The notes under the pieces are model-generated. The model was not told the DNA's origin and ran no database searches. It saw only the letters and a program-made list of their open reading frames with translations. From Stylophora pistillata (taxonomy: Eukaryota): a stretch of 64,000 bases of DNA. The position numbers and the translations under genes are program-made. Location: assembly GCF_002571385.2 (NCBI RefSeq), contig NW_019217872.1, positions 448,046 to 512,045 of the forward strand, given 5' to 3'. Numbering within the stretch: position 1 is the first letter of the stretch; the number at the start of each line of letters is the position of its first letter. This document shows, one piece after another, positions 26,034 to 51,013 of this stretch.

Positions 26034-26776
<743 letters not shown>

Positions 26777-26852
26777 TGCGTTTGGATATAAGGGAGGTGA
26801 AATGCGTCCTTGGACAAGTTGACTAAATTGAAAGCAACAACTATTTCTATCC

Positions 26853-26966
26853 GCTAAATATTATGATACCAACATCCGGACAATGCTAATCTGTTTGACA
26901 GCCAATTAAACATAGTCTGCTAACCTTAACTTGTTTCCACTTTACACGACAAAGGGTCGGTAAATG
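26853..26966 (-). promoter_or_regulatory. conserved proximal promoter of homeobox A
   Basis: Minus strand CATTTACCG...AAGTGGAAACA...TAATTGGCTGTCAAA...GTCCGGATGTTGGTATCATAATATTTA, shared with C and D. Confidence 0.8.
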
Positions 26967-27284
26967 ATTTGGGACTTACCGTAAACAGACATATAAGCGG
27001 TTGTCACCCGAGATGACTGTAGCATAATGAGATCATCAAATGCTTCGCCGACTAACACAGCCATTACACACTACCGCAAGTACATACTTCACTGAGTTGA
27101 CCATTGTTCAAAAATTGTTTCCGGTTTCAAATGTTCTAGAAGGAGAATCATTGACAAAACTCTATACAAAATTTGCTGATGTACCTTTACTTTTGACGTT
27201 TATATGGTGTGGATTTTGGGGAGGAGTTTGTTAAATGTTTTCATTGTTGCGTGATGGTATGGTTCATTGCGAGGAAATTGGCAC

Positions 27285-27332
27285 TATTAGTTCTGTAAAT
27301 GTCGGCCATATATCGCCAGACAATTGTCTAAT
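27285..27332 (-). promoter_or_regulatory. distal conserved element upstream of homeobox A
   Basis: ATTAGACAATTGTC-N15-GACATTT-N3-GAACTAAT matches the element at the same distance upstream of D. Confidence 0.6.
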
Positions 27333-29954
27333 CTCTCTCATATCAAGTTGCATGTGTGACGTTTTCCTGGGTATTTTAAAAGCAGGAAAAACAACGGAAT
27401 CTTTTCCTATTCTTCTGTCATGCAAATTGCAATTTATCAAGCGTAGGTGCCCAAAGGGAAATGTATTAACTGCAGCAGATAAATGATTTGTCACCAGACA
27501 AAAACTGTCAGTTTTTACCCTTTCTTAAGAGCCTTTAATAAGCTTTACTCTCCGGTCGTGTATCAACTCAAAGAATAAATATAAAGCGCAAACATGTCCT
27601 TTACTTCTTCATCAGTTGGGAATTTATGCGATGAGCTATGAGTACCACGTGACGAACGGCGGAAAAAGAGTTCAGAAATTAAGCTCCCTTATTGTGTACT
27701 TGATGAAAGATACGTATTTTAAGAGCAGACCCTCCCCCGCTAAGAGTTTAATTGGGGAGCTTTCATCACGATCGCCAAAATGTTTAAATTTAGCTCAACA
27801 TGAAGATTAAATGTTCTTGTTTCTAATCAAAACAATCTACTCCCTTCGAAGTAAAAATGTGGTATTTACAATAGACAATTTATTTATCTGCGTATCATCC
27901 CATACAGAGTATTAACCCCTGGCCGCTAGAAGTTCGCGTTTCTCGTTTTTGATATATGAACAATTTACGTCGCGTGCCATCAACCAAATCAGGCGAAAGA
28001 CATACGTAACTCATAGCATAAGCTTTCTCTAAATTTTAAGGATTATCCTCATTTTCAGACCGGTTGGTCCGGAGATGCTTAAATGAATTAGATGTTTACA
28101 AGCGCAGGGTTCCGAAAGCCTTTTAGATTTCGATCCTATGAGTGGATATGTCCTATCTCAGTCTGATCTTTTGTTTGTTTATAATCATTTATAACTCTTG
28201 AGAAAGTGGGTTTACTAAGAGGTGATTAAAGCTTTTAAAGGTGGAAATGAAAGACATTACACAGGTATAATCCCTCACAGACTTAGGCCTGCGTAATGTT
28301 CACAGATTGAGGACCATTTGACCAGTGCGTGGAGTTCCGCTGTTAAGAAACCATAAAATTGTGTGCGAATTGTGTGCGAATTGTGTCTCACAGTGAGTAG
28401 ATATTAGAAGATTATTATCTGGTGGTGCAAATGATTATCATTCTTTGATTGAGGTCATCAGACCAGACGTATTGCAGGGCATGTATTGGTGATGAACATT
28501 CCTGTAGCTTAGATTCCTTAAATGCGTATCGCGTCAAGCAAAATTGATCAGTGCGTGGGATCGTGAGTCATAAAAAATATAAGAAATAGAAAAATGTTCT
28601 CTCTCTGAACTGGTCACCATGTCGGATAAAAAAATATTTCTAAGTGAGTATTACTTCGTTTGCTCGGTTACTGAACATTTTTAGTATCAAGGAGGGCAAA
28701 ACAGAGGAATAATGATGATTTAATTAAGCGAGAAATGGGACCGAAAAAATTGTACAAAAAAATTGAACTATAAAATTGAAAAAGGTCCCATTGTACGTGT
28801 TCGAGGCCAATATTCGAGGTTAATATTGAGATATTCAAATAGTTTCGCCAACTCAATTTTGGCGACCTCCCATTAGAAAACTGCAATTACAGTCACAGTA
28901 TCGATCGTGACTTATTCTAAAAGTGCGTTATCGGAAAACGCCTCATTCAGCAGCAGAGAAAAAAAATGTAACAGTTACCTCTCTCGCACTTCACAACCAC
29001 TACTCTTTCAAATGCTAGGTTTGAAGGTTGTGGAAAATATTCAAAGTCCTGTCTAAGTTGAGGTAATTGCAACTCCTTTTGTAATGTTACAATTTACTTG
29101 GAAAGGAATATAATCGACTGAGAAAAGATATTTCAATGAAAGACATGGGATAATAGAAAAAAAAAAAACAAAGATCATATAGGGCAGTAATGAAGATGGA
29201 ACGAGGATGGCAAATATGTAATGGAGAACTGTAATACCATTTGCATATGAGAAACTTATTACTAATCAAATATTTAGGGTGAACCCAATTCGATGTGCCA
29301 ACTCAATGCAAATAAATAAAATAAAATTAGGTAAAGGCATTCAATAAACTCAGAAAAAACTAGAAAAATTTGAAAAAAATAATTTTCTTTGTATCTCCCA
29401 CTGGGATGGACAAGATGATAAGGTATTTCCAAATGATTGCCAGACAGGCATGGCAGTATTTAAAACTGTTGTAAGACTTAGAACGTAGTGTGCGACAAAG
29501 AAATTATATATTACAATCAGCTATTCTAGAAAGAAAGGCAAAGTCAATTATTGCCGCGGATTTTTGTGACCATCAAACTGATATTTTAGTTGGTAAGAGA
29601 TAGTTATTACCAGTTCAGTACTAACTTTCAACCCAAACCATAGCTACACAAGGAAACCTTTCATTACCACGTATCTACGTTTTTGTATATTTGGATCTAT
29701 GCCCAAAAATAACGCACTTTTTGCACGGTAAAATGATAAGCTATAAATCAAGAAAAATTACTAACATCGTTAAACACAATTCACCGTACGAACCAATGAC
29801 CGATTTGGAATAATACAGCAAGATTGTGTTTGGAAATACAGAGTCAATGCAGGATATGGTCTCTTACTTGGTTCAGTGTCTTATTACGTCGTATCCCGGT
29901 ACTCTGTCGCAAATCGTGGAAAGGAAGAAAACCAAGGATAGGCGGTGCCTTAAA

Positions 29955-30763
<809 letters not shown>

Positions 30764-33700
30764 CTTGAATGTTGCCTACGGATATTATTCATATCCAACT
30801 CAATGACAGCGATAAAGATAACTGTATAATCCCAATCACGAAGTATACAGCGTGATTTACAACGTAGTGTTTAATGGTCAGTTTCTATCTTTCACCGTTG
30901 TCTGATTTGTAATCAAAAACGTACTTTTACCTAGAATATTTTGTTAATGAATAAAGCTCAGCAAACGCCCAAATCTAATAACATAAATATGAACAATAAC
31001 TGAGGCTATCGAAGTTCTAAGTTAAGCCTTCTCTGAGTCGATTGGTCAACTTTATCTTAACATAATCTAGGAACAGTTAAACCATCATTTGACGCTGACA
31101 AAAGAACAAGATCGGTTCAACTGATAACATACTCTGTCCGACTCAAACTCCCAAAAAAACTCGGAGTGCGTACCGTTCGGCTAACGCGTTGGTTTTTTTA
31201 AAAAAAAATTGGTTTCAGATGGAGTGGAAATTTTAAAGATAAACAGATTAACAGAAAATTTAAGATAACTCGTTTGATCATCTACATTGGCTTGTCTTAC
31301 CTCGTGCTTCTCACGCAGCTAGTATTGAAGGTGATCTATTATGACAACTTAACTGGGAAGCAACTTAGAAAAAGACCAGTAGCTTTGGCTCAGTAGGTCG
31401 AACAATTGAACACACGTTGTAACAAATTTAAAATATATGTGATCTAATGCGACGGAAAGTATCTTGCTGTGCGGAGCATTCACCATATTTATGCTCAATT
31501 ATATCCTGAAGCGAAAAGATTGTTAAGTCGGCCAGAATTTTTAAAGGGTTAAATCAAGTTAATTTGAAGGATTGAAAAAGTGCACCTCTGTACATAAAAT
31601 GTGTTGAAGACATCATTACCTCTCTCACAGACCCTCTTGATAGAACATTCCGGTGAAGATGGATATTGTCCAAACACAAACATATCCAGCCATTTGACTA
31701 GCCCCAGGGCCCATCATTCACGAGGAGGGCACACATTAGCCACATGTTTTAATAGCACCACAACGCTAAAACAAACGATCATATAAAGAGCAGTTAAAAT
31801 GACCTTCCATAAAGAAATTTTTAAATCATTATGTTTTAATCAACAACGAGTTTGCGAAAGGCGTGTTGCCTTTTGATTCAGAATTAGCCATCGATTAAAA
31901 ATTTTAATATAATGGTTTGTTTGGAAGGTAAGCGGTGTTTATCCCTGGATAACCATATCTGGTTACCGTGTTTTCTTGTGGTATGACCAACTTGGTTCCT
32001 CTGACAAATGGCCCTAAGTGCTGAAACTTTAATCTACATTGAAACTAAAATGTGCAGTTAATTTATTGGCGGAAATACCTAAATGACTCCTATCGAGAAA
32101 TTGTCTTATTCTTCCATTCATCAATAAAACGTCGGCAGTTAAGAAAAGGCTCCTAATTGTTGCTTCATAGAAAAACTGAGACTCCTCTAAAGTAACTAAG
32201 CACAGCATTTGTAGACATAACATTTTTCTGTATCCTTTTGAAAAATAACTTTATCATAGAAAATGACTCGAGAAATTGGGTGAGGCAACATCCAACTTAC
32301 TATCCTCCTTTTCCCACAATGAAGGGAGTCGAGAAGAGTCTTAATGGTATTACAAACTTTCTGCTAGTACACCAAGCATATGTTTTGAAAATAATCCAAA
32401 TTTGATCGGAATACCACCTGCCTTGCTTCATCCTTTTTTTGTAAGAACGAACTAATGTTTGGACATTTAATCCCTCAATGCTTCAAATATAGTCACCCTT
32501 TGGCGAGAAACAAATTCTCAGCAAATGGTGAAACTATGTAAAGAATCATAATGACAAAAACACACCGCCCAAATAAAAAGCTATCGATGGTAAGATTTCA
32601 CAAAGTACATTATGAATGATACATATTATTTGAATATTAAGATGTTAAGCGGCTTAAAGAACAACCAGGGCTAACAGCGAGTTACAATGGCTTACCTATC
32701 CACACTCAATGGAAAAAAAGTCTGTCTTAAAAAAAAGAAGAGGTCAAAATCCGGATTTGAAATAAAATGATCCCCTTTTCTGTTACTTTACTGCTTTTCT
32801 ACTTTCGGTAAACGGACTAAAACTCAATGTAAGGTCATGTAAATTTTTGTTTTCTTTTGCTACGAAGCAGTTGACGTTCATCTAAAGGATTTGTGAATTC
32901 TACTTTTAGACTCAAAAAGTCGGTAAAACGGCGATTCCCTTTATCTGAGAGGAAATGAATTCCTTCACCCTTTGATCAAGCTCTAGTTACTCAAGCCGCC
33001 TGCTAAGTTAACCAGCGCGAGCCCATTCAAGTTGCCTTATGCGCTGTTACGCAGCAATTTTACTAATATGTTTTCAATTACCATAAATTCCCACTGCTTC
33101 CGCCAACTGAATGTAGATCGTCTGTCCCGTGCTCTCTGACAAAGATTACAAGGAAAGTTTGACAAATTTGGCAAGACGTCTTTTGGTAAGAATTCAAGTA
33201 ACTCAGTCTTTTGTTTGACGAAAAAGTATCTCACCGTCTCAGGAAAAAAATTTTCTCATCATTGTCTGAATCAAGTCTGTTAAAAAAAAGTCGCAGTAAC
33301 TTTGTGGTGGCTAGATACAATGAATTGAGGATGACAAACAGCATCTAAAATAACACGAGTAACTGACCTTTTTGAATTACTAAATGCGTCAGGCAGCACT
33401 CCGTTAAACTGAGCTCTGTTAAAGCGAACATATTTCCAAGTTGGTCCTCCTATACCAATGGCTTTAAACAAAGACACATAATAAAAACACAAATCGTTTA
33501 TGATATATGGTCAGATATCTCGTCCATTGTATCATGAGAATGTGTGTTTCATTACAGAGCCTTCACAACTGCCGCGCATCAAGCGACGTCAGATTGTACG
33601 CTAAAACCGGATAGGGAAAACTATAGATCAGACATTTCCGTGGGCATTTAACTGACATATAACGATAAAAGTGCCAAGCTAGTTGCTAGATCTTTTAATC

Positions 33701-33977
33701 ACTCCGCTTATTTTTGCAAGTGCTTTGGTGTTGCGTTTGTGGTTGGTCTTAATATAACCTTCACCAGCTGAACATTTTTCTAAAATCCAAGCTCAGGCTG
33801 GTTTTGGGGAGTTGTGGAAACTACTGTGGTACTTCATAGGACTTTGATCACACACAAGCGTTTTCGTCAATTCGAAACCTTTGTTTAATGCTCTTAACTC
33901 GTACTACTTTGTAAATACTGCATATTTTCAGTGAAAAGCGGAATTATTCAAATGTTTAGCTTATTCAATGGTTAGGG

Positions 33978-34038
33978 TAGCCTGCGTCGCAGACAGTCTA
34001 AACCGCTGGTATGACATGTTCGGCTGCAACACAGGCCA
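33978..34038. mobile_element. 61-bp mini DNA transposon (AcademH-like ends, 9-bp TSD)
   Basis: TSD tggttaggg at 33969-33977 and 34039-34047. Imperfect TIR tagcctgcgtcgcag / ctgcaacacaggcca. Confidence 0.75.
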
Positions 34039-35160
34039 TGGTTAGGGTTCGTTTCTTGCAAAAACTTTTTTCAGATAATTTCAGGCTTCAGAAAAAGTTA
34101 TGTAAGTAAATCAAGTTTTGAAGGATAGGCTTACGATTCTATATTCAGCACTTTCTTGTCAGTTAGGAATTGCCAACCGCGAAATATAGTACAAATAAAA
34201 ATGTAAGTCGATTGTCGCAACAATGTCATGATCTGAACAAATGAGAGGGATCAGAAATTGAAGAAATATTTCAATAAGTGCAGAGCTACAGGCATAGTCT
34301 AAAAGACTCCAAGCTCTTTCAACTTCACTTAAAGCAGTAACCTTTCACCAAACTGTTAGCTCGCCTCAGTAGCAGTAATACCATTTAGCTAAGGAGTCTC
34401 CTGGTAGTTCGGCCTTTAAACAAAGTTCGTCTAACAAACAGAATTAGTTACGCTGGTAAGTCATCTTCTCACCAGAGTCCTAGGAATGAGTTTTAGAAAC
34501 ACGAGTCAGCTAAACTGAATTATCTTAAGCATTTTTATCGAGCAACGAGCTTCATATTAAACAATAGGCTTTTGTTGTATAGTGAATGCAAAGATACTTT
34601 ATGAATATGGCCAGTTATGGCAGTGGGGTCATAGACATTGATACCGCTGCTCTACTAAGCTAACGGTTTCATTCCAGTACTCAACCTGAACATGACAGTG
34701 TATTAACTATGGATACTCATAGAAACCTCATTTTTTTACAACCAGCGAAAGATTGCAAACAAAAGGTAAGCACAGCGCCCCACACCGATTATGACATACA
34801 TCTCTACAGAGCCACACTAAATAGAAATCATTTTTACGGAAATGTTAAACTTTACATATCAAGGAAGGACACGGGAGTCAGTTGTTCGCAATGAAATCTT
34901 CGAAATACCAATGTTTTCTTTGAGCGTTCATCGTATAGGTTCGACCCGGAAGATGGGAATATCTCGCCTTCAGGTGGCGTTGGAGACGAAATAATCTTCC
35001 TTGATTGGGAATTCACGGTAAGGTACGACTAGAAATGGGTTTATCATCAACTCCTCTAGTTCCAAGACTCCCAAATTAGTTCGCCTCACCTGTACAGTAC
35101 ATTTGTTGCTATATCCAAGTTATTTCGTTACCCCCACCGACGCAGCCCCTAACAGTTTCC

Positions 35161-35350
35161 TTATTCATTTGTACAGTACATTGCTATCAGCCTTTATTCA
35201 TTTGTACAGTACATTGCTATCAGCCTTTATTTATTTGTACAGTACATTGCTATCAGCCTTTATTCATTGTACAGTACATTGCTATCAGCCTTTATTCATT
35301 TGCACAGTACATTGCTATCAACCTAAAGGCTGATAGCAATGTACTGTACA
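35161..35350. repeat. 33-bp tandem repeat (about 5 copies) followed by an inverted copy
   Basis: ttattcatttgtacagtacattgctatcagcct repeated, then aaaggctgatagcaatgtactgtaca inverted. Confidence 0.85.
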
Positions 35351-36469
35351 TTGTATCAATGCTGCCCCTGTCAGGATACTCAAGAACCTGACGCCGGGAT
35401 ATTTGCCTTTTTTCTCAAAACCTCTTTTCTTTGCATTGTATTGATGTCTAACAGAGAAATAGCAGATTTAATGATTTTTCGATGATAAAGCAAATTATTG
35501 TGAAATATACCATGACGACACGATAGGTACGAAGCGGAATTTAGCGAAACAAATGTCCTTCACTCAGTGGAACAGCGCCCACAGACTCATTTTATTTCTC
35601 TTGATATTTAGACTCACGCTTGGCTCTAAAGTGACAGTCATTTCCTAAGTGCAATTTCATGAGGGGCACTTAGGCTACTTGGATGGCAAACACTTGAGAG
35701 TAACTTACTCTGATACAGCAGCAACTGTTTCGTCGTTATGTAGCGTTTTAAAGCCAAAAATGATTGCAATGCACTAATCCGATGAGGAACAGCTCAGGAC
35801 GAAGAGCTGGTCTAAATCTTATTTTATAAAATCTCCCTAAAGAATGATGCTCAGTCACTCATCCAGATCAACCCAATGTAGGAGCTAAGCCGCGAAACAA
35901 CTAATAATTAGGCAATCAAGGTGAACCAATTATGCGACTGTCTATGAAAAGGAGCAAAGGAAAACACAGTGTGTAGAAAGTCAATGTGGTCACTTTTACA
36001 CCGTCATTGAGTCGGGGTCAAATGGAGCCCCCCAAGTTGCGATTTAAACACTAATGAATTATCAAGTTTTAGTTAAATTCATTTAAATAATAGTTGAACT
36101 GATACAAAATATGAAAAGATAATCGCCTCTTCAGAAGTATTTGTATCGTCGCACTTTCTAATCTACGTCACGGTTTGTAGATCGATCTTGAAAATAAAAA
36201 GATCAGCCTCATTCTTTGACTGGGCCTCAAGTGTGTCGGCTACTCCATCAGACCGAGGTTATAATCTCTTCATCACACTTAATATTTCTCGGCATACACA
36301 GTAGCCCTCTGTTATTATTGTACATGGATTCTTTGCCACAACACTACCCTTGTCGATGGGGGAGAAAACTAAAATTTTGCCAGACGCATGCGTAGTTGGT
36401 TTTTATTATCCGGGATATCTGCGTCTTAACATGCCTCGCCGTTAACATGCCGCGCTTTCGCACTGATCG

Positions 36470-36695
36470 TTTTAAATCTTCATTTATCCCGGCTATGTGC
36501 GCGTGTGCTAACCTAGATTTTTAGCTATTCCACTGCTGTATATTAGTTACATCAGTAATTTTATTTAGTTCTTAGCATTTTTGTAATTGGTAGTCTTATA
36601 TAGTCTTATATAATCAATGATTGTGAAAAGCACGCAATTCAGCCTATGGCTGCAATGTATTTTATTTGGTAATAAACTATCTATCTATCTATCTC
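36470..36695 (+). mobile_element. retroelement 3' UTR fragment
   Basis: AT-rich tail ending in aataaa followed by (ctat)n. Confidence 0.45.
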
Positions 36696-37889: not shown

Positions 37890-38010
37890 CTGTCAAAGCG
37901 CGAGTTATTAGCGGCATTATCTTAATTGGCTATCAAGTAATCTAATTGGGGGCCAATGTTGATATTAATTAAACATGAACAGTTGTCAAAATATTGATCA
38001 CATTGATTGC
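37890..38010. promoter_or_regulatory. candidate intergenic enhancer (clustered TAATTG and TGTCAAA)
   Basis: attatcttaattggctatcaa matches the homeobox C promoter core at 20/21. Also a second TAATTGG, TTAATTAA and two TGTCAAA. Confidence 0.35.
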
Positions 38011-39830
38011 GGTGATTTGCAGTAAGCAGCCATATGCCATCCGATGTCAAGGCTCAGCTTCTTCTGGCATCATTGAATTTTTAGTAAACTTCATAAGGCG
38101 TGAAGTTCCCTTTTGTGTCAAACACCTAACAATTAACGGCCTCTCTTATTTTGATCAAGGTGAGCTGTCTTCAAGATATTTATATATTTTCAAACACGAG
38201 AGGAATCTGTTCCTTATTTCGTAATACTGAGTAACGGGTAACTCTGAAGAAACAGAGAGAGGACAGTAACTCCTAAATGAAATATTGAGCGTCTATTTTT
38301 AATTTCTTCCCCTCTATGATGCACCAAAAACCATTAAATCACCACTGTATGTACAGAGAGAATTCCTGACGTCCCAGTTAAAGAGCTTCAAAGCTAAAGA
38401 GCTTTTCCCCAGTTACTGACAAAGTAAACATCTCCTACGTCGGCTAGATCCGTACACTGAGCACCGCCACCGCAAGCAGTAAGCATAAGTCTCTTACCGC
38501 TGACAGTAAGGAGTGCTTATCATGTTTGAAGGAACTTACAACGAAAAGCAGAGGACCTTTGCATTTCCGAGATACATGGCAAAACACGATGGTTATTAAA
38601 TCGGCGGACTAAATGGCGATAGAGAGCAACACTTTGGATTTTGAGGAAACCATAAGGCTCGGAGAAGCGATATGAGCAACATCGCTCTGGAAAGTTCCAC
38701 TGATTCCACTATCAACGCACTGATCTTTTCCTTTGCGTCGGCTGTTTTCGATGCTTTTCCCTTCCTTCTGCAATCACGCAGTTCTGTATTCCTTATTTCG
38801 TTTCACTAAAGATTGCTCATTGCTTAAGCTAGATCTGCCATTGTGTTCCTCGAATAAAATTGGAAAAAGCTCACAAACTTTTTCTTGTGAAAAGCTCACA
38901 CTCCCTATCTTCGAAAATTAGAATATTAGGGAACTAGAACAGACTGATTAACTATCATGTAGGTGTTTTACATTCTGCTGAGAATGGACAATCACTTCTT
39001 TTGTGGAAATTGTGGGAAGACAAGGGATAGGCGGCTTTATTTTGGCAAATTTAATTCACTTGAAAAATGTAAATGAAAATGTTTTTTAAACAAACGAAGA
39101 GAAAGTTGTGATTATATTCCAGTACCTGCATCCAGCAGTTCAACTAAAAAAGCACCAAACAGATGAAGGTGAGATAGCATCGCAACTTGGTTAACGATAG
39201 AATGCAATAAAGTCCATCGAATAGGTTTTTTTCAAGAATCATTCACTTCAAGTATAATTTAATTGCACATTCTGTCCATCGTCGACCAGTGAATAATTCA
39301 AACGATTCATCGACAAAACAAACGTAGGCATGAGGAAAATGAATGAAGGATTGTGAACAAATGAATAAACGGATATAATTTCCTGATAAGGTTTGTAAAG
39401 AATGAAGGCTGTTAAGAGCCACTAAATGAAGCTAATTAAAACCAGTTAAATTCCTGTGGTAGATTAAGTCGTGCCGCTAACCACAATGAAGACAAGGCTG
39501 TTATGTTGTGTAATGCCAGGTACAAGCAACAACCTTGCTATGGTTTTTCGTGTTACTATGGGATCTGTTGATAGCCTGCGTAGCGGCCCTAGAGGGAGGG
39601 GGGAAGGGGGTGGGGAGCCGAGCGGAGCGAGGCTTGGGGAAGGGAAAGGAGGGCAAACAGAGCGAGGCTTGGGGAGAGGAGAGGATAGGAAGGGCCTCAG
39701 TGCAAGCGACCCCGTAGGTTCTTCGAAATATCCTATCTCTCATGGACGAAGAATTCTCATCGGTCGAGATCAAATAACTGTCACTCAGCCGTGAAAGTGA
39801 TAAGAAACAGGCAAGTTGTGCTCGAACAAC

Positions 39831-40523: not shown

Positions 40524-40559
40524 GAGGCTGGTGAGTTGAAGCGTAAACACTTTCTTACT

Positions 40560-41014
40560 GGACTCTTTCCCGTCGGTGTACTGAATTTTCGTTTGATTGC
40601 GAAATAGAGCTCGAGTTCTCAACCGAAGATGGACATGAAGCCTTTTCCAAGAGTTCATAAAACTTGTAAAAGGTGTTCACTTTTCAGGTACAGGTAAGGC
40701 AAACAATTTGGGGGAGATTTGGCTGTTTTGCGAAGTAAAATCCAAGATCTCGAGACAGGTCCGCGATAACATATTGGAATTCTTCTCTCTGACTTGCTTT
40801 AAAGATATTAAGAAAGGTTTTGAACCCAGTTCCTAACTTGATTCTTAAGTTATCTCCACAAAAGCGGCAAGTTGACGGAATATCTATATTAGGCTCTCTA
40901 CCCCTCTTAGGTTTTTCTTTGAAATTTTCCTTGTCCTCCGACATTTCATCCACGTGCAGCCGTGTTTTGACAGTTTGCATGGGTCAGTGCTCTGCTACTT
41001 TTAGTATTTTCCAT
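40560..41014 (-). pseudogene. transposon ORF fragment with CxxC...CxxC zinc-finger-like motif
   Basis: KPKRGREP...TCRFCG...IVCLTC. Frameshift and in-frame stop. Confidence 0.55.
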
Positions 41015-41607
41015 GCTTCACTGGCGTACGTCTTAAAATGGCGCTTCGTGATTGGATAGTTTTGACAGTTCTTGTTTGACATTCGAAACACGATACGCAA
41101 AATTAATCGGTGGGAGTTTCGAAGAATCTACGGGGTCGCTGGCAGGCCCTTCCTTTCCTCTCCCCAAGCCTCTCTCCGCTCGGCTCCCTACCCCCTTACC
41201 CCCTCCCTCTAAGGCCGCTACGCAGGCTAATCTGTTGAGGAAATATGTTGCGCGTCAGAACGAAGAGCAAAAGTCACTCATTAGAGGAACTACATCATAA
41301 CAAAGCAAACAAGCAAGATTCTAATGGATAAATGATTAAACAAATACGTAGCCAAAAAAAAAACCCAACCAATTAAATAAATAGATGAAATGACATAACC
41401 CGGTTTTCCTGGAATTTTATGGGCCTATTCATTTATCATCTGACCATTGACCATGTCCAAGAGAATGTGGAATGATATCCTCTTGTCATGTCTAAGCTCG
41501 CAGCTTTATTAGGATTTTAAATACAACATAGTCTAATAGCAAAAGGTTTGCTTTTAAAAAACGCCAAATGAAATGTTGCTTCACTAACATGAAAGAATGG
41601 AATTATC

Positions 41608-41609
41608 AC

Positions 41610-41648
<39 letters not shown>

Positions 41649-41950
41649 GGAATGTAGAAATGTATATGTACAAAGTAATCACCCCAAATTAATATCTACG
41701 GACACAAGAACCACACGCGGAAAAGACTGGGAAAAAAAAACTTCAACACCCACGATGGCAAGGCTTCGCCCTCATTTTGCACATATCTTAGAAACAGGTT
41801 TGTCTGTTAAAATATCTCTTGATGATTGCCAAAATAACGGATATCGTTTCCACCCGTTAAATGCTTTAATGACCTCTCAATAAAACCACTTGATTGAAGT
41901 AACAAACTAATGTAAACAAATACTCGATCTACGAACTTTTCAACGGATTA
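41608..41950 (-). mobile_element. LINE 3' fragment with (TTA)n tail
   Basis: (tta)n at 41608-41648 followed by a degenerate ORF2-end-like sequence on the minus strand. Confidence 0.45.
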
Positions 41951-42971
41951 AGAGATTATACATACATGCCAATTCAGAAACTCGCCTAATCAGTGTAACT
42001 AACCGACCTTCAATTGCGGCTTGTATCCCTAGAAACCAAAAAAACTATAAACTTCTCGAGAAGTGAATAGCAACCGTATTGGCGTTCAAGTTACCTCCAG
42101 GAAATGCGGATAATCAGGATGATCTTTAAGATTTCATAAATCGAATACCGAGGGGGTTAAGAATGCAATGGCCAGCCAAGGCGAATGGCACGCGACGTCA
42201 AATCTCTCAAAAATTATGGCAGTACATGAGGTTACGTCAGATCGACAGAGGTTTGTCCGTAGGGTTTAGTTTATGCACTTGTTTGTTTCATGATAGTATT
42301 TCTGGAGTAATCAGTACTCGGGCAATCTTCTTCGTGTAGTTTTACTTTTACTCGAATTACGACAGGCGAAACGTGTTATCACTTATTTTGTATGGATTTC
42401 GTCAAAAGCTGCCAACATACATGACCTCACTGAGCTGTGCCACTGCGTTGTTTCAAAGTAAAATCATATCTCCAAATTAACCCTTTGCAGGGGAGGGTCG
42501 CTCCAAATGTTTCAACAGTTCTGTGTGCGGTAGATAATTCCCAGTGCGGTGAAAATCATTTTCCGTTCTTCTTATAATCGTGCCTATCAAATTATACCAC
42601 TCACAAAGTTATGGGCTTTGCAATTTTCTCATGCTACAACACTTACCTAGTAACGAATCGGAGGAACAAGGCGCGCAGATCACGTGAGGATGAATTGTCT
42701 TTATTGATGTGACATTACAAATGAAAAACATTCACTTTCTGAACAGGTCTTACATGGTTGGAGTTGTGAAATTCTAAAGCTAGCCAGTGAATGGATTCTC
42801 GTAAAGTAAAAGTTGGCAAATAAGTCCACAATGAGGATATTTTTAGGTCGATGATCGTCTTTATGCTATTTTACATAGCTCTGTTTAAAGCCAGCCAACA
42901 ATTTCTGATCTAATTAACGTTTTGCCAAAAGTGACAAAACCTGCACCCTTTCCTTAATATAGAGTTTCAAA

Positions 42972-43082
42972 CATTTACCGCTCTTTTGTTCGTCAAGTGG
43001 AAACATCCCACGGTTCATCAAATATTATCTTAATTGGCTGTCAAAGCATTAATAGTCCGGATGCTGGTATCATAATATTTAG
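42972..43082 (+). promoter_or_regulatory. conserved proximal promoter of homeobox C
   Basis: CATTTACCG...AAGTGGAAACA...TAATTGGCTGTCAAA...GTCCGGATGCTGGTATCATAATATTTA. Confidence 0.8.
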
Positions 43083-43188
43083 CAGCTATGAGTTAACACA
43101 AATTTGTGCAATCTCGTGGGCGTTTCAATTTCTCTCAGTGAGTGGCTCGTAGCAGATTTATCCCACAGACTCGTAGCAGATCAACTTC

Positions 43189-43954
<766 letters not shown>

Positions 43955-46136
43955 ATTCTTCATTCTTCTGTTTCTTCAAACTGTGCTATTCTTCGGCAGG
44001 TCTCCTAATCTGTAATTTCGTGGTGGCTATTTATAGTTCAGAACTAAATTAGCCTCTTGTGAATTTTTTACACTAGTTTAGAACATTCTTGCTCAGCACC
44101 TTGTCTGAAAATTCATAGCAAAGGCGTCGTCTCCTCACTGGAAACAGGAAGAACAGTTTCAGTCTGATGGTGCCGAAACTACTACTTTGAAAACAGACTT
44201 ATTCTACTGTGCACTTTCAAACCGAACTTCTATGAAGAAGTATGTTCGCTGTCGTCCACAACAGTTCTTTATAGCACTAAGTATTTATTAACTGGTTAAT
44301 ATCACCAAAGAATGATTAAATAAGACTTCATATAGGCATGAGATGTTCTTGTTGGTATTTAGACCCGTAAGTGAAGGCTTCCTTGACGAAATAGCGCTAA
44401 TATTTGATAAATGACCTAGAAATACCTCTAAAAAGATAAAAAAAAATGTGGAATAAACATAACAGTATTGTGTGTGCGTCACATTTTTGCGATACTTGCT
44501 GATTGTAAGTGATGACGAGCCGACGAAATTTGAAGTAAACCATGTGCAAGTGAGGAATTCGCGACTAAGCTGAATACTTTTCATCTTTGGCCATCTCCTT
44601 GAAAAATGCATTTTGAGGTCCTTAAACTACCAAAGAAAATCGAGTTGATTTCCAAATGCAATTAATGGAATGTTACAAAACACTTGTTACACTGAGCGAC
44701 ACGAAGCATTGACAAGTCACTGGTTACTAACAAAATGGAGAATAATGAAAGTTTATGCTAACCCTCTCTGACTCTTTCCCAGCCTTTCTCGGACTACATG
44801 CAACCCCTAAAGGAACTTTAGTTTGCATTAGCCTAGTCTTTAACTTCCATGAAGGACGGAAAATTCAAGGAAAACTCAGTAAAAAACAATAGCTAGAAAA
44901 CAATTTTAAGGTGATAAAGAAAATGTGAAATGGCAATTTCGAAAAGGGTGCTGGGATACATAAACAACTCCTGCATCTTACTGCATTCTGAGGATGATGT
45001 TTTCAATTAGGAAGAAAAATGAAGAGAAATGTAGAACATTTTTCGTGAGTGTGAGATAAAGAATTAGCACCCCATTGAGGAATAACCACAAATCTTCCGA
45101 CTTTGACAGAATTCAATTTATCGTAGAATGAGGCGGTCATCTCTTAGTAAATCAATAGACCCTCACGGGGAGCAGAAAAGAGGCTTGTTACCTTGCTACC
45201 GTGGCTCAGTAAACTGAAATATCACTAAGGAACTCGTCTATCCTTCCTGTCATTGACCTCATTGGTAAAAAAGAACACGAAGAGTCAAGGAAAACAGCAG
45301 AGTAACGATAATTCGAGTTGAATGACTCCCAGTATCAACAAATGAATTTGTTCGCTGGCCTGAAATGTTTCACCCTCAGACTATTGCCAGTTCCATAAAC
45401 GAAATAACAAAAACTAATTTTTATTCATGCTGTGTTTTTAGTTTAAAATATCTTCAGAATTATGGGATTATAAAGGCGTATTCAGTTAAAACATGATTAC
45501 GGTCACCAGTTTTATCTTAGCTGGATTTGTTTCGCCAAGTTTCATCCGTTTTTCGGAGGATAAATAAAAAAAGGTCGAAAACTGATCAGGAAACTGCGGA
45601 GCCGATTCTTTGGCTCCAGAATGTTACGCTTCAAGTCTGATCTATCATGATCAGGAAAAGCTTGCAGATTTTAATGAGAAGTTGTTTTAACTAGCTGTGT
45701 ATATTTTATCTTTCAATCTGATGAACGAGATTCGTGCATTTTTATCCTTAAATATGGCTGGTAATGAACTCAGCCATTCGAGTTCAAACCAATTTGGTCA
45801 AGTACCCGACGGTTTCCTTACTTGATATTCAAGAAATAAGTATTCAAAATAGTGTCCTTTCTGCTTTAATATACGATTTTAATGACGATGCAACCACATA
45901 ACCAAAATTCAACGATAGTTAACGAGATTATTTTTCTTTAAACCACCGAATACTCTTATTATAAGACCGGACATTAAGATGTCCTCAGCTATCCGTTGGC
46001 ATAGTCACGAATGTTTGTTGTGAAGAATCTCGTTATGAATAAACGACATTAGGTAGCCTAAAGTAATTTTTATCTCGTTTGATACCGTATCGCTAAACGC
46101 GATCAAAGCGACCAACGTCGTAAATAGTTCCAGGAG

Positions 46137-47039
46137 TTACAACTCAACAGACCTTTCTCTTCGGCGGGCGGCTCGGCTTCCCTTAAATAGTTCTCTTAAT
46201 CCTGCTCTGTACTTTGCACTTTGGAATATGTAGACCACTGGATTCACACAGCAGCTGGTGTAAACAAGAAAATAGGACAATTTGTACAGCAGGCTTCTGG
46301 TGGAGAGATTGACCGCCGAGACGAGTATAAACGGAATAAAGCATACGACAAACAAAAAAGTGACTGTTATCAAAATTGTTATAATTTTATGTTTGTCTTT
46401 GTAGTCTTGTTCGACGTGGTTTTCATTAGGAGGAAGTATGTTGTTGAAGTAAAGAGCTTTTATGATTTGAAAATAACAGAAAGTCATAGTGATGACTGCA
46501 GCGCCCACCAGTGTCGCCAACAGTGTCCAATAAATTCGGGAATTACTCTCTTTCCACTCCATAAAGCACTGCTTCACTTTGACATCGTATCTCTGCTTTA
46601 TAAACAGAGGCAAAACAAAAGCGATGGAAAATCCCCAAATAAGGGCAATCGCAATTATGACGCGTTGTTTGTGGAGTTTTAGGTGCAAAGCCATGGGTCG
46701 CAGCAAAGCATTGTATCTTTCAGTTGAAATAAGAGTGAGTGTAAGTCCTGAAACGAGTAATGTGATTCCTGCAATGAGATGCATCGTCACAAACTTGCAT
46801 AGAAAACTACCCACATTACCGCTGGGGTGCTCCACAAATCGTAGAATAATCCCCGGTACACAAAGCACCAAGGAAATGATTTCAGAAACTGCCACATTAG
46901 CCAGGAGAAAGTTGGTGGTTGTATGCATAGATCTGTGCCTTCTGACCACAGTAATAAACAAAATATTTCCCAAAATTCCAGCTATCACAATCAGGATGTA
47001 AAAAGGCAGAAGACCAATGTCTACTGACCAACTTTCCAT
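46137..47039 (-). CDS. intronless rhodopsin-class GPCR, peptide-receptor-like, 300 aa
   Basis: Seven hydrophobic segments; GN in TM1, NFLLANVAVSE, ECL1/TM3 CK, ERY, TM4 W..P, CFIPF and NPVVY. Frame intact. Confidence 0.92.
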   Translation of the reverse strand: MESWSVDIGLLPFYILIVIAGILGNILFITVVRRHRSMHTTTNFLLANVAVSEIISLVLCVPGIILRFVEHPSGNVGSFLCKFVTMHLIAGITLLVSGLTLTLISTERYNALLRPMALHLKLHKQRVIIAIALIWGFSIAFVLPLFIKQRYDVKVKQCFMEWKESNSRIYWTLLATLVGAAVITMTFCYFQIIKALYFNNILPPNENHVEQDYKDKHKIITILITVTFLFVVCFIPFILVSAVNLSTRSLLYKLSYFLVYTSCCVNPVVYIFQSAKYRAGLRELFKGSRAARRRERSVEL

Positions 47040-49732
47040 GTTTTCAAGGATACGATTAAGCGTTTCTTATATTCCCTTCCGCTGGCATTTTGAGCATGTA
47101 CTGTACTTAGCTGATCTTAGCTCAAAACCAAGGAGTTGAATATTGAAACCAACTTGACAGGTCACCTACTCCTCAATAAATGAGTGTGCATATATTTATC
47201 TTTGTCTCATCTGCTTCATGCTGAGAAATGACTTATTCTCATCTTCAAAGATTATGCAAAACACTGTTGTTTGTTAGCGCCTTTCCATTCAGTTCATTTG
47301 CATTACAAAGGCTCACTAAAATTGTGAGAAATTTTCCATTTCATGTAGCTGCTTCTTGAAGAAAAGCAAAGATCCACTGTTGAAAGTTGTACGTGTTAAT
47401 GAGAATATTTCTGATGCATTTGCACGGTGCACGGGTTTATTTAATGATTTTTTTTTTACACTTTGCGCTTGTTTAATGTTCGAACAGAGAAGCCACTGAA
47501 ATATATTTTTTCACTCTGACTTCAAGTGAGTATAAAGACTTTTTAATGAGTTTAATTATTTAGCACCTCAAAATGAGACAGGTGGTCGATTAGAAGAATA
47601 AGGGAAAATGATTCTTTCGATTAGCACATGAACAATATCCGGATTAAGCCAGCACTCGTGAAAGACCTAATCAACTAAGGCTCACGAATGTCCTTCTAAA
47701 TTTTATTGCTTTATATTGACCGCAGATGACTGTTGTAAGTTCGATCCCTTAAATACAACGAATTTCTTTTATATAGCAGCTGCAGTGAGTGAATCAATGG
47801 AAGGCGAAGGGTTTTATAGTGGGTGATTTATCAAATCGCTCGGAGACATATTTGGCAAATTTTTTGAACGATATATTTTTAATCACAGTCATTCGATAAA
47901 GATGGTGATAACGATAACAATGTCAACTAATCCAAGCCAAGACTTACCGATAGGCATGCGCAGTCATATAAAACACAATTTATGATTGAATTTTAAAAAA
48001 TGCTCAGGAATCAACATCTTTGTTGATCTACTAACGCAGCCAACGCTTTTGACTGTAGTCAACCTTGCAGTGGGAAGAACACAGATCCTGTCACATATAA
48101 ATCCATAACAATAACTTCTCTGTAACTAAGTGCAAGAGTATCCGATCACGAAATATAAAGGTCCAGAGTTCAGTTTCTGGTGGGAGCCTCAAATCTTTTT
48201 TAAATCCCATGCACATGACAATTTTGTTTCAAAAGAATTTTTTCATTCCTCAACTAAAGTCGAAATTTACTCTGTTCCCTTGGCAAGTCGTTTACTGTTG
48301 TCGAAGGTTGCTGAGGACGGCATAGAAGTATCACCTTTTTTAACGTCAGAGCGGGTAGAAAATATTTTTTTTAATCCGACAATTCTATTTATTTATACAC
48401 AATCCTCCTTCAACAGCCATGCGGGTCGTTACAGTGACAAAAACTCATCTTCATTCATATATATGGACCTCATGGATTTCTTTCTTTGATGAAACTAAAG
48501 TACCGAAGATTTTAACCCCCGGTTTAACAAGAAGCTGACTAAGTTTAAGAACGGAGTTGCTGGTTGATGTTTGCGCACGTGGACGTGGTCGCCTCTAGTA
48601 CCAGGCGCCTACGGACATAATGTTGTCCTCAACCCAAGTGTCTAGGACCGGATTGTGCACAGTTAGCAAAGATATCAGAAGCTTTGACTTCAAAGCCGGA
48701 TTTACGTTTGGGGGTGAACGGCCTTATTCATCTAAATGACCGATCAGTAAACCACTTACTTGAAGGCAGTAAACGTTTATAAACAAATGCTCCAGATTAG
48801 AGTTATGACTAACTGCTTACAACAGGATTATCCCAATGACCTGTGCTTATGGGCATTTGCCCTAGTTAAGCAGGTGCTATTGGTCGACGATTCCGAACCA
48901 GTGCCAAGAAACCACAGAATACGAGACAATTTTCAGATAAATAACACACTTAGATGTTTGCCTTAAGCATAGCAACGCCTGATCCAATAAGGCTAAATGC
49001 GCAGGAAGTCAGGATTACTCATAGCATGGATTACTTTGTCAGAAAGTTAATACGTTTTCAATGATGTCGAATCTAAACATTGCACGCGAAAGGAATTTTA
49101 CTTGTGTACATGTCTTGGTCGCCCTTGAAGCAATAGATATAATGCACCATTGGTGTGCACTCCGACATACGGTCACCAAATCTTTTTTTCCAAGGAATAA
49201 ACAACCTTTAGCGTATGTTAATTTATTTTTCGCAAGTACGTGTTATTGTTATGGTGTTGCATTGTCTATGGATTATTTCAAGTCTAGTTGTTCTCAGCTG
49301 TCATCTGACATCAATTCTTCGTTCTTCATGCAACATTGGGGAATAAAACTGGAAAGGTTATATTCGGACAAATCAGTACTCTGTTACAAAAAACAACGTT
49401 TTCGATCTCAAAATAGTCACAAATATTTAAAACTTCGAGTTTAAGCGTTAGTTGATTATGATATTTAATCGTTATTAGAACATCTGTAAATTAACTCTTC
49501 GTGGGGGAATTCACACTGCACACTCAACCCATTCATCATCTAAACGGTTTGAGCTTGGATCTAACACCTTATGTCAAGTGGACAAAAACGTTGTCTTTAA
49601 AAAGGTTAAATTCTTTTATCTATCAAGCAACATTTTCTTTGAGCACAAAGTGTAAACAACCATCCCAGCATTGAAAACATAGCTTTTAAAATTTTCCAAA
49701 ATGGAACTACAGTTGGTACAGGAAATTCGATA

Positions 49733-49779
49733 ATTAGGCAATTGTCGGCTTCAATGAGCTTGACATTTGTTGAATTAAT
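49733..49779 (+). promoter_or_regulatory. distal conserved element upstream of homeobox D
   Basis: ATTAGGCAATTGTC-N15-GACATTT-N3-GAATTAAT, about 550 bp upstream of the ATG, as for gene A. Confidence 0.6.
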
Positions 49780-50093
49780 TCCAAGGCCTGCAAGGCCTCT
49801 AATAACATTTGTTTACAATTCCTCACGCAATTAGACGAACCTTGACTTCATTGGGAAAATTCTTTTTTAATTTGATTATTTGTTACTTCTAGAGGGTGGG
49901 TAAAAATAACCCAGTTTGAAGTTCAAAACGATCAGAGATTCAAGAGATAACCGCTGGGCTGAGGTGCTCAAATTTAACCGAAGACAAACGCTGTACATGA
50001 ACTCATATCTTCGCAATCAAATATTTGTTGATATAATTATCTACATGTCAAATTGATCGCTTATACATATTTCTGTTTATAGTTAGCGCTAAA

Positions 50094-50204
50094 CATTTAC
50101 CGGTTCTTTGTTCTCTTAAGTGGAAACATACGAAGGTTATCAGACATATCTAATTGGCTGTCAAAGAGATTAATCGTGTCCGGATGTTGGTATCACAATA
50201 TTTA
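50094..50204 (+). promoter_or_regulatory. conserved proximal promoter of homeobox D
   Basis: CATTTACCG...AAGTGGAAACA...TAATTGGCTGTCAAA...GTCCGGATGTTGGTATCACAATATTTA. Confidence 0.8.
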
Positions 50205-50260
50205 ACAGCTACGAATGGTTGTTGATTTTATTACTTTCTTGGGGAAGTTATCGTCATTAA

Positions 50261-51013
<753 letters not shown>

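What the first reader, a model, noticed from the sequence alone, without database searches (positions are those of the whole stretch)
26853..50204. A ~110-bp promoter grammar conserved in three paralogs while introns have diverged: possible auto- or cross-repression circuit
Seen: upstream of A (26853-26966), C (42972-43082) and D (50094-50204) the same ordered blocks recur: CATTTACCG, AAGTGGAAACA, TAATTGGCTGTCAAA, GTCCGGATGYTGGTATCAYAATATTTA. They end about 80-110 bp before the ATG. Introns and most of exon 1 do not align by eye, and B lacks the element. Known: TAATTG is a Q50 homeodomain site, ATTGG an inverted CCAAT box, CTGTCA a TALE (Meis/Prep) site and CCGGATG an ETS core. Inference: shared activation by ETS/TALE/NF-Y, with the encoded eh1 repressors binding the overlapping TAATTGG of their own promoters.
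Basis: partly seen in the sequence, partly recalled or inferred. Interest (0 to 1): 0.85.

Follow-up and report, generated by a model that had tools for sequence, protein, structure and literature searches.

The report
Ancient promoter module shared by coral homeobox paralogs
Three neighbouring homeobox genes of the coral Stylophora pistillata keep the same ~190-bp block of non-coding DNA at their start, a block also found in other corals and sea anemones with almost unchanged spacing, so it is a very old gene switch; the proposed self-repression circuit stays untested.

Summary
The ordered blocks stand at the stated places upstream of A (minus strand), C and D. These are the only three copies in the 398-Mb genome. 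Their three-way identity (0.78) equals that of the homeobox, against a 0.1-0.2 background in intron, exon 1 and flanks.

The module is longer than reported (~190 bp, with a further 5' block ATTTGATGATCTAATTA). In corals it pairs with a second shared module 1.3-1.5 kb upstream. It is older than the A/C/D duplications. Each copy is closer to its ortholog in Orbicella, Pocillopora or Porites than to its paralogs. A profile of the coral copies finds the module just upstream of the orthologs in Nematostella, Actinia and Exaiptasia, with the same spacings (21-22, 54-57 and 31 bp).

B lacks it because B is a separate, older lineage. A decayed fifth copy keeps one block.

Spliced transcript contigs from several corals start inside, at the 5' edge of, or upstream of the module, so it is promoter plus 5' leader, not purely upstream DNA. 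I found no RNA structure; an invariant upstream ATG exists in corals.

TAATTG and TGTCA are kept at depth; the CCAAT reading is not. Auto- or cross-repression is plausible (BarH-type recognition helix) but untested. This is a new member of a known kind, a deep conserved non-coding element.

The parts
26848..27042 (-).
   Evidence: nhmmer profile hit, E 6e-52; alignments; 97% identical to the Pocillopora ortholog.
42902..43088 (+). Proximal module of gene C
   Evidence: Profile hit, E 4e-43; 84% identical to the Orbicella C ortholog L016:907-1047.
50022..50212 (+). Proximal module of gene D
   Evidence: Profile hit, E 1e-46; 91% identical over 152 nt to the Orbicella D ortholog; 0.94 identity in 50-nt windows, above the homeobox at 0.88.
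27025..27041 (-). Block 0 in A, ATTTgATGATcTaATTA (C: 42901-42916; D: 50023-50039)
   Evidence: At least 89% conserved in 19 coral copies; TGATCTCATTAG is also kept in Nematostella.
26958..26969 (-). Block 1 in A, AAaCaTTTACCG (C: 42969-42980; D: 50091-50102). Two transcript contigs begin 1-10 nt before it
   Evidence: ATTTACC is kept in anemones.
26937..26944 (-). Block 2 in A, TaAAGTGG (C: 42993-43000; D: 50116-50123), preceded by TTTGT
   Evidence: it lies 21-22 nt after TTTACC in all 23 copies, anemones included.
26894..26908 (-). Block 3 in A, TAATTGGCTGTCAAA (C: 43031-43045; D: 50151-50165): homeodomain site plus TALE-like TGTCA
   Evidence: the invariant letters across corals and anemones are TAATTG..TGTCA.
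26853..26879 (-). Block 4 in A, CCGGATG..GtATcAtAATATTTAGC (C: 43057-43083; D: 50180-50206); it holds the upstream ATG
   Evidence: short upstream reading frame of 3-21 codons in all 19 coral copies; GGATG lies 31 nt after TAATTG.
28140..28262 (-). Distal module of A, ~1.4 kb upstream
   Evidence: Profile hit, E 7e-29; 86% identical to Porites L018:8446-8563; alignment.
41835..41949 (+). Distal module of C, ~1.3 kb upstream
   Evidence: Profile hit, E 7e-24.
48699..48820 (+). Distal module of D, ~1.5 kb upstream
   Evidence: Profile hit, E 8e-28; 0.82-0.86 identity to Orbicella.
26037..26776 (-). Gene A: ATG at 26776, exon 1 to 26650, intron 26516-26649, homeobox exon 26037-26515
   Evidence: the splice joint is seen in raw reads and contigs.
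43189..43951 (+). Gene C: ATG at 43189, exon 1 to 43306 (predicted donor), homeobox exon within 43454-43951
   Evidence: the splice sites are read from the sequence and not checked with reads.
50291..51010 (+). Gene D: ATG at 50291, predicted in-frame 102-nt intron 50406-50507, homeobox exon to 51010
   Evidence: the splice sites are read from the sequence and not checked with reads.
29958..30763 (-). Gene B (no module): ATG at 30763, intron 30374-30570, homeobox exon 29958-30373
   Evidence: it forms a separate clade in the tree.
37916..38616 (+). Decayed fifth copy. It keeps ATTATCTTAATTGGCTATCAA (37916-37936) and a homeobox helix-3 relic (38590-38616) at the right spacing, with no open frame

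Best explanation
The element is the start-site-proximal cis-regulatory module (proximal/core promoter running into the 5' leader) of an anthozoan NK-like, eh1-bearing homeobox gene. It existed before corals and sea anemones split. It was copied with the gene in the coral-specific tandem duplications that gave A, C and D, and purifying selection has held it in each copy since.

It most likely works at the DNA level as a fixed platform for several sequence-specific factors whose order and spacing matter. The blocks are: block 0 (TGATCTCATTA), AAAYATTTACC, CTTTGT, an AAGTG site 21-22 bp on, a TAATTG..TGTCA homeodomain/TALE composite 54-57 bp on, and GGATG 31 bp after that.

In corals it works together with a second shared module 1.3-1.5 kb upstream.

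Shown: the conservation, its age, its uniqueness in the genome, the rigid spacing, the position at the transcript 5' end, and the lack of RNA structure. Inferred: that factors bind it, and which ones.
For: - Only 3 copies exist in the genome.
- Three-way paralog identity is 0.78 against a 0.1-0.2 background, equal to the homeobox.
- Orthologs are closer than paralogs: D to Orbicella D 91%, A to Pocillopora A 97%, C to Orbicella C 84%; paralog pairs are about 76-82% identical (0.72-0.85 in 40-nt windows).
- Stylophora D against Orbicella D reaches 0.94 in the module against 0.88 in the homeobox, with a 0.25-0.4 background.
- All 18 metagenome contigs that hold the two-block pattern carry an eh1-homeobox gene whose ATG lies 113-147 nt downstream.
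- The coral profile finds the module as the top hit exactly upstream of the genes in Nematostella (E 5e-11), Actinia (6e-10 and 6e-7) and Exaiptasia (2e-3). Shuffle z-scores reach 8, against about 0 for B.
- Spacings of 21-22, 54-57 and 31 bp are kept in corals and anemones.
- Transcript 5' ends fall in or near it.
- RNAalifold gives -1.66 kcal/mol with no compensatory pair, and there is no Rfam family.
Against: - No start-site mapping (CAGE or 5' RACE), chromatin or binding data were available.
- Transcript contigs put most or all of the module inside the RNA. Two A-type contigs run 313-397 nt upstream of it. An RNA-level role for part of it therefore cannot be excluded.
- The motif-to-factor assignments rest on consensus sequences recalled from the literature, not on a test.
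- The metagenome copies were selected by blocks 3 and 4, so the invariance of those two blocks in that set is partly circular. The genome-derived orthologs were not selected in that way.
Confidence: 0.7

Rival explanations
1. One reading: ETS, TALE and NF-Y factors activate the three promoters, and the encoded eh1 (Groucho-recruiting) homeodomain proteins bind the TAATTG of their own and each other's modules and repress them (negative auto- and cross-regulation). This is a sub-case of the best explanation, not an alternative to it.
For: - TAATTG is invariant in every coral and anemone copy, and a second TAAT-type site follows about 20 bp later in most.
- The proteins carry an N-terminal eh1 motif.
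- Their recognition helix matches BARHL2 (T47, Q50, T54). BARHL2 binds TAATTG and TAAACG, and those two threonines are needed for TAAAC (PMC11996681).
- TAAACG is present in the distal module of Stylophora D, Orbicella D and Porites A.
Against: - Nothing here tests binding or repression.
- The genome search returned 65 matches to the homeobox exon, many with Q50, so TAATTG does not point to these proteins in particular.
- The CCAAT reading fails in anemones (TAATTGC or TAATTGT).
- CCGGATG is not kept in Actinia or Exaiptasia.
- A-type copies lack the second TAAT site.
Confidence: 0.2
2. The constraint acts on the RNA. The module, or at least its coral-specific 3' half, is a 5'-leader element that controls translation. 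This could work through the invariant upstream AUG (CCGGAUG) and its short reading frame, or through a sequence-specific RNA-binding protein.
For: - Spliced transcripts include the 3' half in Acropora, Porites, Orbicella, an unnamed D-type coral and Stylophora.
- The upstream ATG is present in all 19 coral copies. Its frame has 3-21 codons and always ends before the main ATG. D-type copies keep a 13-codon peptide, MLV.QYLA..NGC.
- The deepest insect CNEs are reported to lie in 5' UTRs (PMC4613772).
Against: - There is no conserved RNA structure or covariation.
- The upstream reading frame varies in length, frame and peptide among the types.
- Variation within the block does not follow codon periodicity.
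- Block 0 and the distal module are conserved equally well, yet the C- and D-type transcript contigs start downstream of block 0 and no contig laid here reaches the distal module.
- Three of four anemone copies lack the upstream ATG.
Confidence: 0.2
3. The similarity among A, C and D is kept by gene conversion or recent duplication, not by selection on function.
For: The genes are tandem neighbours. Concerted evolution has been suggested for tandem coral gene families (PMC6214176).
Against: - Each copy is more like its ortholog in another family or suborder than like its paralogs.
- A-type and C-type each include a complex-clade coral, so the copies have been separate since before the complex/robust split, put at about 415 My (PMC6214176).
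- The intron and exon 1 next to the module are at background identity.
Confidence: 0.02
4. It is a dispersed repeat or transposon fragment, or a chance resemblance.
For: None beyond the fact that it is repeated three times in the window.
Against: - There are only three copies in 398 Mb.
- The 7 other genomic hits to the 15-mer core share no flanking similarity with the module.
- The position relative to the ATG is always the same.
Confidence: 0.01

Closest known systems
Conserved non-coding elements (CNEs) at developmental transcription-factor genes, including duplicated CNEs kept by paralogs, and the promoter or 5'-UTR CNEs of insects (Davies et al. 2015, PMC4613772)
   Same: It is a non-coding, syntenic, single-locus sequence next to a homeobox gene. 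[quoted passage not shown] It overlaps the transcript 5' end, as the oldest insect CNEs do.
   Different: It lies in Hexacorallia, where I found only a catalogue of 145 ultra-conserved elements between two edwardsiid anemones (PMC10719294). It is kept in three tandem paralogs plus a distal partner module. Block spacing is fixed to within 1-3 bp.
Homeobox autoregulatory elements with homeodomain-TALE composite sites (for example the Hox/Pbx-Meis elements of vertebrate Hox genes; named from general knowledge, not tested here)
   Same: A TAAT-type site lies a few bases from a TGTCA/TGACA TALE core, deeply conserved, next to a homeobox gene whose own product should recognise TAATTG.
   Different: The site sits at the transcript start rather than in a remote enhancer. 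The arrangement TAATTG-NN(N)-TGTCA is not the classical TGATNNAT Pbx-Hox site. The proposed regulation is repression through eh1. No binding or genetic evidence exists.
CCAAT-box (NF-Y) proximal promoters
   Same: Coral copies read AGCCAATTA on the opposite strand.
   Different: The CCAAT pentamer is not kept in sea anemones. The box lies at or inside the transcribed region rather than 60-100 bp upstream of the start.
Leaders with an upstream open reading frame that limits translation of regulatory genes
   Same: An invariant upstream AUG with a short frame that ends before the main AUG is present in transcripts.
   Different: The conservation extends well outside the upstream frame and is not codon-like. 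The frame is absent from most anemone copies.

Membership tests
Conserved non-coding element / phylogenetic footprint | Non-coding sequence | tested here: met
   The blocks contain stop codons (TAATTG, TAATATTTAG) and the only frame is 3-21 codons long. The module lies upstream of the main ATG in all copies.
Conserved non-coding element / phylogenetic footprint | Conservation well above the neighbouring non-coding DNA across species | tested here: met
   Identity is 0.94 against a 0.25-0.4 background between Stylophora and Orbicella. Profile hits in anemones reach E 5e-11.
Conserved non-coding element / phylogenetic footprint | Same position relative to the orthologous gene | tested here: met
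   The ATG lies 113-147 nt after TAATTG in corals and 141-176 nt in anemones.
Dispersed repeat / transposable element | Many copies at unrelated loci | tested here: not met
   There are three copies in 398 Mb, all at the paralogs.
Promoter (DNA upstream of the transcription start) | Lies upstream of the mapped start site | tested here: inconclusive
   Relative to the T of TAATTG, transcript contig 5' ends lie about 397 and 313 nt upstream (A-type), 70 and 62 nt upstream, 2 nt upstream, and 28 nt downstream. Contigs cannot fix a start; CAGE is needed.
NF-Y CCAAT-box promoter | CCAAT pentamer conserved, 60-100 bp upstream of the start | tested here: not met
   ATTGG is kept in corals only; anemones read TAATTGC or TAATTGT. 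The box lies within the transcripts.
Homeodomain autoregulatory element | Conserved site matching the specificity expected for the encoded homeodomain | tested here: met
   TAATTG is invariant. The recognition helix is of BARHL2 type, and BARHL2 binds TAATTG and TAAACG (PMC11996681). This matches at the motif level only.
Homeodomain autoregulatory element | The gene's own product binds the element and changes its expression | not testable with these tools
   Needs EMSA, DAP-seq or ChIP, and loss-of-function experiments.
Structured cis-acting RNA element | Conserved secondary structure with compensatory changes | tested here: not met
   RNAalifold gives -1.66 kcal/mol with 0 compensatory pairs in 19 sequences. 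There is no Rfam match.
Regulatory upstream open reading frame | Upstream AUG present in the mRNA and conserved | tested here: met
   It is present in all 19 coral copies and lies inside the transcripts. Actinia and Exaiptasia lack it.
Regulatory upstream open reading frame | It is translated and lowers translation of the main frame | not testable with these tools
   Needs ribosome profiling or reporter assays.
Tlx homeobox family (the NCBI name of the A protein) | Orthology with bilaterian and medusozoan Tlx | not tested
   Automatic names conflict: TLX1-like, NK1, BarH-like 2, MSX-2-like, ceh-9, HMX2, vex1, pnx. The nearest solved homeodomains are GBX1, BARHL2, Clawless and Msx1. Travert et al. 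report no Tlx in any anthozoan, and their 'Tlx-like' gene lacks eh1 (PMC10336111). I therefore file the genes only as NK-like ANTP-class genes of unresolved family.

The most novel reading that the evidence does not exclude
The module is a rigid homeodomain-TALE 'grammar' more than 500 million years old, through which this NK-like repressor shuts off its own promoter. After the coral duplications, the shared module wired A, C and D into a mutual-repression circuit. BarH-type sites would serve this circuit in both modules: TAATTG in the proximal one and TAAACG in the distal one. If so, it would be the first deeply conserved autoregulatory element defined at base resolution in a cnidarian.
Probability: 0.2. 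Interest if true: 0.7.

Novelty: new member of a known kind. Interest (0 to 1): 0.5.

Why it matters
Deeply conserved regulatory DNA is rare outside vertebrates and insects and is little charted in cnidarians. This is a compact module of 150-190 bp whose blocks and spacings have held since before corals and sea anemones split. That split is put at 500 My or more in PMC6214176.

It is more conserved than the homeobox it serves, and it survived three rounds of gene duplication. It lies at the transcript start of a gene that also exists in Nematostella, where transgenic reporters and knock-outs are routine.

That makes it a ready test case for three questions: whether fixed motif order and spacing ('grammar') matter in an early-branching animal, how paralogs share or partition regulatory input, and whether negative autoregulation of NK-like repressors is ancient.

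Tried and rejected
- Dispersed repeat: rejected. Only 3 genomic copies exist, and the other hits to the 15-mer core share no flank similarity.
- Gene conversion: rejected, because orthologs are closer than paralogs.
- Structured RNA: RNAalifold on 19 copies found nothing, and Rfam found nothing.
- TATA box reading of AATATTTA with a start about 30 nt downstream: not supported, because transcripts in Acropora, Porites, Orbicella and Stylophora include that block.
- CCAAT/NF-Y: not kept in anemones.
- Tlx identity of the genes: not adopted.
- Start-site mapping from reads: inconclusive.
  - Sense reads of run X23 thin out just past 26904.
  - One polyA contig runs through the module to 27305.
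  - Opposite-strand reads cover 27014-27455 but may be copies of a single fragment.
- Two more distant relatives (L041 and L042, taxa unknown) gave no profile hit, only weak look-alikes of blocks 0 and 1 by eye.
- Look-ups for Oculina P0007 and Nematostella P0067 found no record, and P0106 had no DNA.
- The coral cell atlas paper could not be linked to these genes, because the window's own accession numbers are hidden.
- The bacterial promoter scan is irrelevant to a eukaryote.
- Spliced protein models were not joined. Only the homeobox exon was searched, by reference.
Full report
**What is there.** The window is from Stylophora pistillata: the A protein has a 100% match named from that species, and the window is contig C89 of a 398-Mb assembly. 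It holds four eh1-plus-homeodomain genes:
- A, minus strand, ATG at 26776.
- B, minus strand, ATG at 30763.
- C, plus strand, ATG at 43189.
- D, plus strand, ATG at 50291.

The A and B introns (26516-26649 and 30374-30570) are confirmed by spliced reads and contigs. The C and D splice sites are read from the sequence only. Protein searches used the homeobox exon by reference.

**Check of the observation.**
- In a three-way alignment from -1700 to +1000, background identity is 0.1-0.2. That background includes the intron, most of exon 1 and the 3' part of the leader. The element reaches 0.78, the same peak as the homeobox.
- A search of the whole genome with the C copy finds only the three copies.
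- The 15-mer core occurs 10 times in the genome, against 1 for the reversed control. The 7 sites outside this cluster share no flanking similarity, and two of them are one local duplicate.

So the element is real, unique to this cluster, and not a repeat. The conserved stretch is longer than reported, about 190 bp: 26848-27042, 42902-43088 and 50022-50212. It has an extra 5' block, ATTTgATGATcTaATTA.

1. A fifth, decayed copy lies between B and C. It keeps 20 of 21 bases around TAATTGGCTATCAA (37916-37936) and a homeobox helix-3 relic (38590-38616) at the right distance, with no open frame.
2. A second shared module lies 1.3-1.5 kb upstream of A, C and D: 28140-28262, 41835-41949 and 48699-48820. 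It is found in every coral contig with enough upstream sequence, and not in anemones.
3. Upstream of D, four more peaks are conserved with Orbicella but are not shared by the paralogs.

**Age.** Orthologous loci were fetched through the proteins. In each comparison the module is closer between orthologs than between paralogs:

| Stylophora copy | Ortholog | Identity |
|---|---|---|
| A | Pocillopora A | 97% |
| D | Orbicella D | 91% over 152 nt |
| C | Orbicella C | 84% |
| A | Porites A | blocks kept |

- In 50-nt windows, Stylophora D against Orbicella D reaches 0.94 in the module. The homeobox reaches 0.88, and unalignable background is 0.25-0.4.
- A pattern scan of metagenome contigs returned 18 contigs. 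All of them carry an MASF(S/T)I eh1 start 113-147 nt downstream, and a homeobox.
- A tree of the homeobox exons places Porites with A and Acropora with C. The copies therefore predate the complex/robust coral split, put at about 415 My in PMC6214176.
- B (Stylophora, Pocillopora, Porites) is a separate clade on a long branch. It has a nearly invariant protein and lacks the C-terminal [13 protein letters not shown] motif of the others. B is not a sibling that lost the module.

**Sea anemones.** The upstream regions of the orthologs in Actinia (two genes), Exaiptasia and Nematostella show the same blocks in the same order.
- A profile built from the coral copies, run on 62 kb of anemone DNA, gives its best hits exactly upstream of the genes: Nematostella E 5e-11, Actinia 6e-10 and 6e-7, Exaiptasia 2e-3.
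- Local-alignment z-scores against shuffles reach 8, and are about 0 for B's upstream region.
- Spacing is nearly fixed in all 23 copies. TTTACC to AAGTG is 21-22 bp. TTTACC to the first TAATTG is 54-57 bp, with two exceptions. TAATTG to GGATG is 31 bp in corals and in Nematostella.
- The coral-anemone split is put at 500 My or more (PMC6214176).
- Two more distant relatives of unknown taxon gave no profile hit.

**Where transcription starts.** This is the weak point of the 'promoter' reading. The 5' ends of spliced transcript contigs, relative to the T of TAATTG, are:

| Contig | Type and species | 5' end |
|---|---|---|
| L017 | C-type, Acropora | 28 nt downstream, at GGATG |
| L019 | A-type, Porites | 2 nt upstream |
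| L025 | D-type coral | 62 nt upstream |
| L022 | C-type, Orbicella | 70 nt upstream |
| L030 | A-type coral | 313 nt upstream |
| run X1 contig | A, Stylophora | about 397 nt upstream |

- The 62- and 70-nt ends fall 1-10 nt before AAACATTTACC.
- In stranded raw reads, sense coverage of A fades just past 26904. Opposite-strand reads cover 27014-27455, but these may be copies of one fragment. A divergent upstream transcript could explain the long A-type contigs.
- Contigs cannot fix a start site.

The module is therefore promoter plus 5' leader.

**DNA or RNA?**
- RNAalifold on 19 coral copies gives -1.66 kcal/mol and no compensatory pair. Rfam has nothing.
- CCGGATG supplies an upstream ATG in all 19 coral copies. 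Its frame has 3-21 codons and ends before the main ATG. D-type copies keep a 13-codon peptide. A translational role for the coral-specific 3' half is possible.
- The upstream frame does not explain block 0, blocks 1-3 or the distal module. Actinia and Exaiptasia also lack it.
- I therefore favour a DNA-level platform with rigid spacing, and keep the RNA reading as a partial rival.

**Motifs.**
- The letters kept at full depth are TGATCTCATTA, A(T)TTTACC, (C)TTTGT, AAGTG, TAATTG..TGTCA and TTAAT.
- The inverted CCAAT is coral-only (anemones read TAATTGC or TAATTGT), so NF-Y is not supported at depth.
- CCGGATG is coral-wide and near-kept only in Nematostella.
- Further assignments are recalled consensus matches, and so leads rather than tests: AAGTG as an NK-type site, CTTTGT as a Sox/TCF-type site, and AAATATTTAC and the distal TAAACAAA as forkhead-like sites.

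**Autoregulation.**
- The encoded homeodomain is an NK-like ANTP domain of unresolved family. Automatic names conflict. The nearest solved domains are GBX1, BARHL2, Clawless and Msx1. It is neither the Tlx nor the 'Tlx-like' of Travert et al. (PMC10336111).
- Its recognition helix equals that of BARHL2 apart from F/Y49, with T47, Q50 and T54.
- BARHL2 binds TAATTG and, through those two threonines, TAAACG (PMC11996681).
- TAATTG is invariant in the proximal module. TAAACG stands in the distal module of Stylophora D, Orbicella D and Porites A.

This makes self-binding plausible, and with eh1 it makes repression plausible. Many other homeodomains could use the same sites, however, and nothing was tested. 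A and B are both expressed in the same bulk RNA runs, which says nothing about cell-level co-expression.

**Verdict.**
A conserved regulatory module is confirmed. Its status as a pure promoter, the NF-Y input and the loss from a sibling B are not supported. The repression circuit is untested.
- By kind this is a conserved non-coding element at a developmental gene, kept in paralogs. That kind is known. This member stands out for its depth (Hexacorallia-wide), its fixed spacing, its conservation above that of the homeobox, and its ready testability in Nematostella.

No assembly gap was filled. The reads call used 5,501 letters.

Noticed in passing
window 37916-38616 (+): A decayed fifth paralog lies between B and C. 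Only one promoter block (20 of 21 bases) and a homeobox helix-3 relic (which would read WLLNRRTKW) survive, and there is no open frame. The block is also kept in Pocillopora (L014:200-221), but that is within what 72% flank identity allows.
   Followed up: partly
window 48970-49760 (relative to the D ATG: -1315..-1265, -1075..-1030, -850..-775, -585..-540): Four further non-coding peaks (0.8-0.9 identity) are conserved between Stylophora D and Orbicella D. They are not shared with A or C, apart from a weak A-D similarity near -570. They may be D-specific enhancers.
   Followed up: partly
window 29958-30763 (-), and 28620-31300: The B protein is almost identical between Stylophora, Pocillopora and Porites over 119 residues, has a proline-rich C-terminus, and belongs to a separate lineage. 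Its transcript contig runs from 28620 to beyond 31300. That implies a 3' UTR of about 1.3 kb and at least 540 nt of RNA upstream of the ATG.
   Followed up: partly
window 27014-27455 (+ strand RNA): Stranded reads of the opposite sense lie just upstream of A's module in run X23. There are 7 molecules with identical ends, perhaps one fragment. This could be a divergent promoter transcript.
   Followed up: no
window 46134-47026 (-): An intronless 7TM receptor gene (Pfam 7tm_1 in the Orbicella call) lies between C and D. Its position is conserved with Orbicella (74% over 902 nt).
   Followed up: no
window 27168-27185 vs 30734-30751: A 16-of-18 base match links DNA ~400 nt upstream of A with the eh1-coding start of B (the upstream copy would read GTSANF, followed by a stop). 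It could be a relic of a B-like first exon, or chance.
   Followed up: no
window 35086-35364: A 33-bp tandem repeat (about 5 units, 97-98% alike) ends in an inverted copy of itself (27-41 nt arms, up to 100% complementary).
   Followed up: no
window 39572-39728 and 41117-41229: Inverted repeats (82 nt at 91% identity, plus shorter arms) enclose about 1.4 kb. This could be a small terminal-inverted-repeat element between the pseudogene and C.
   Followed up: no
L021:2399-2469 and 9790-9860 (Exaiptasia): The module core occurs twice with identical sequence, 7.4 kb apart, though only one gene is called. This may be a local duplication or an assembly duplicate.
   Followed up: no
L016:3010-3064 vs window 41602-41653, 6096-6135: An ATT/ATTATC-type simple repeat is shared between Orbicella and the window. 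It is low-complexity sequence, not homology.
   Followed up: no
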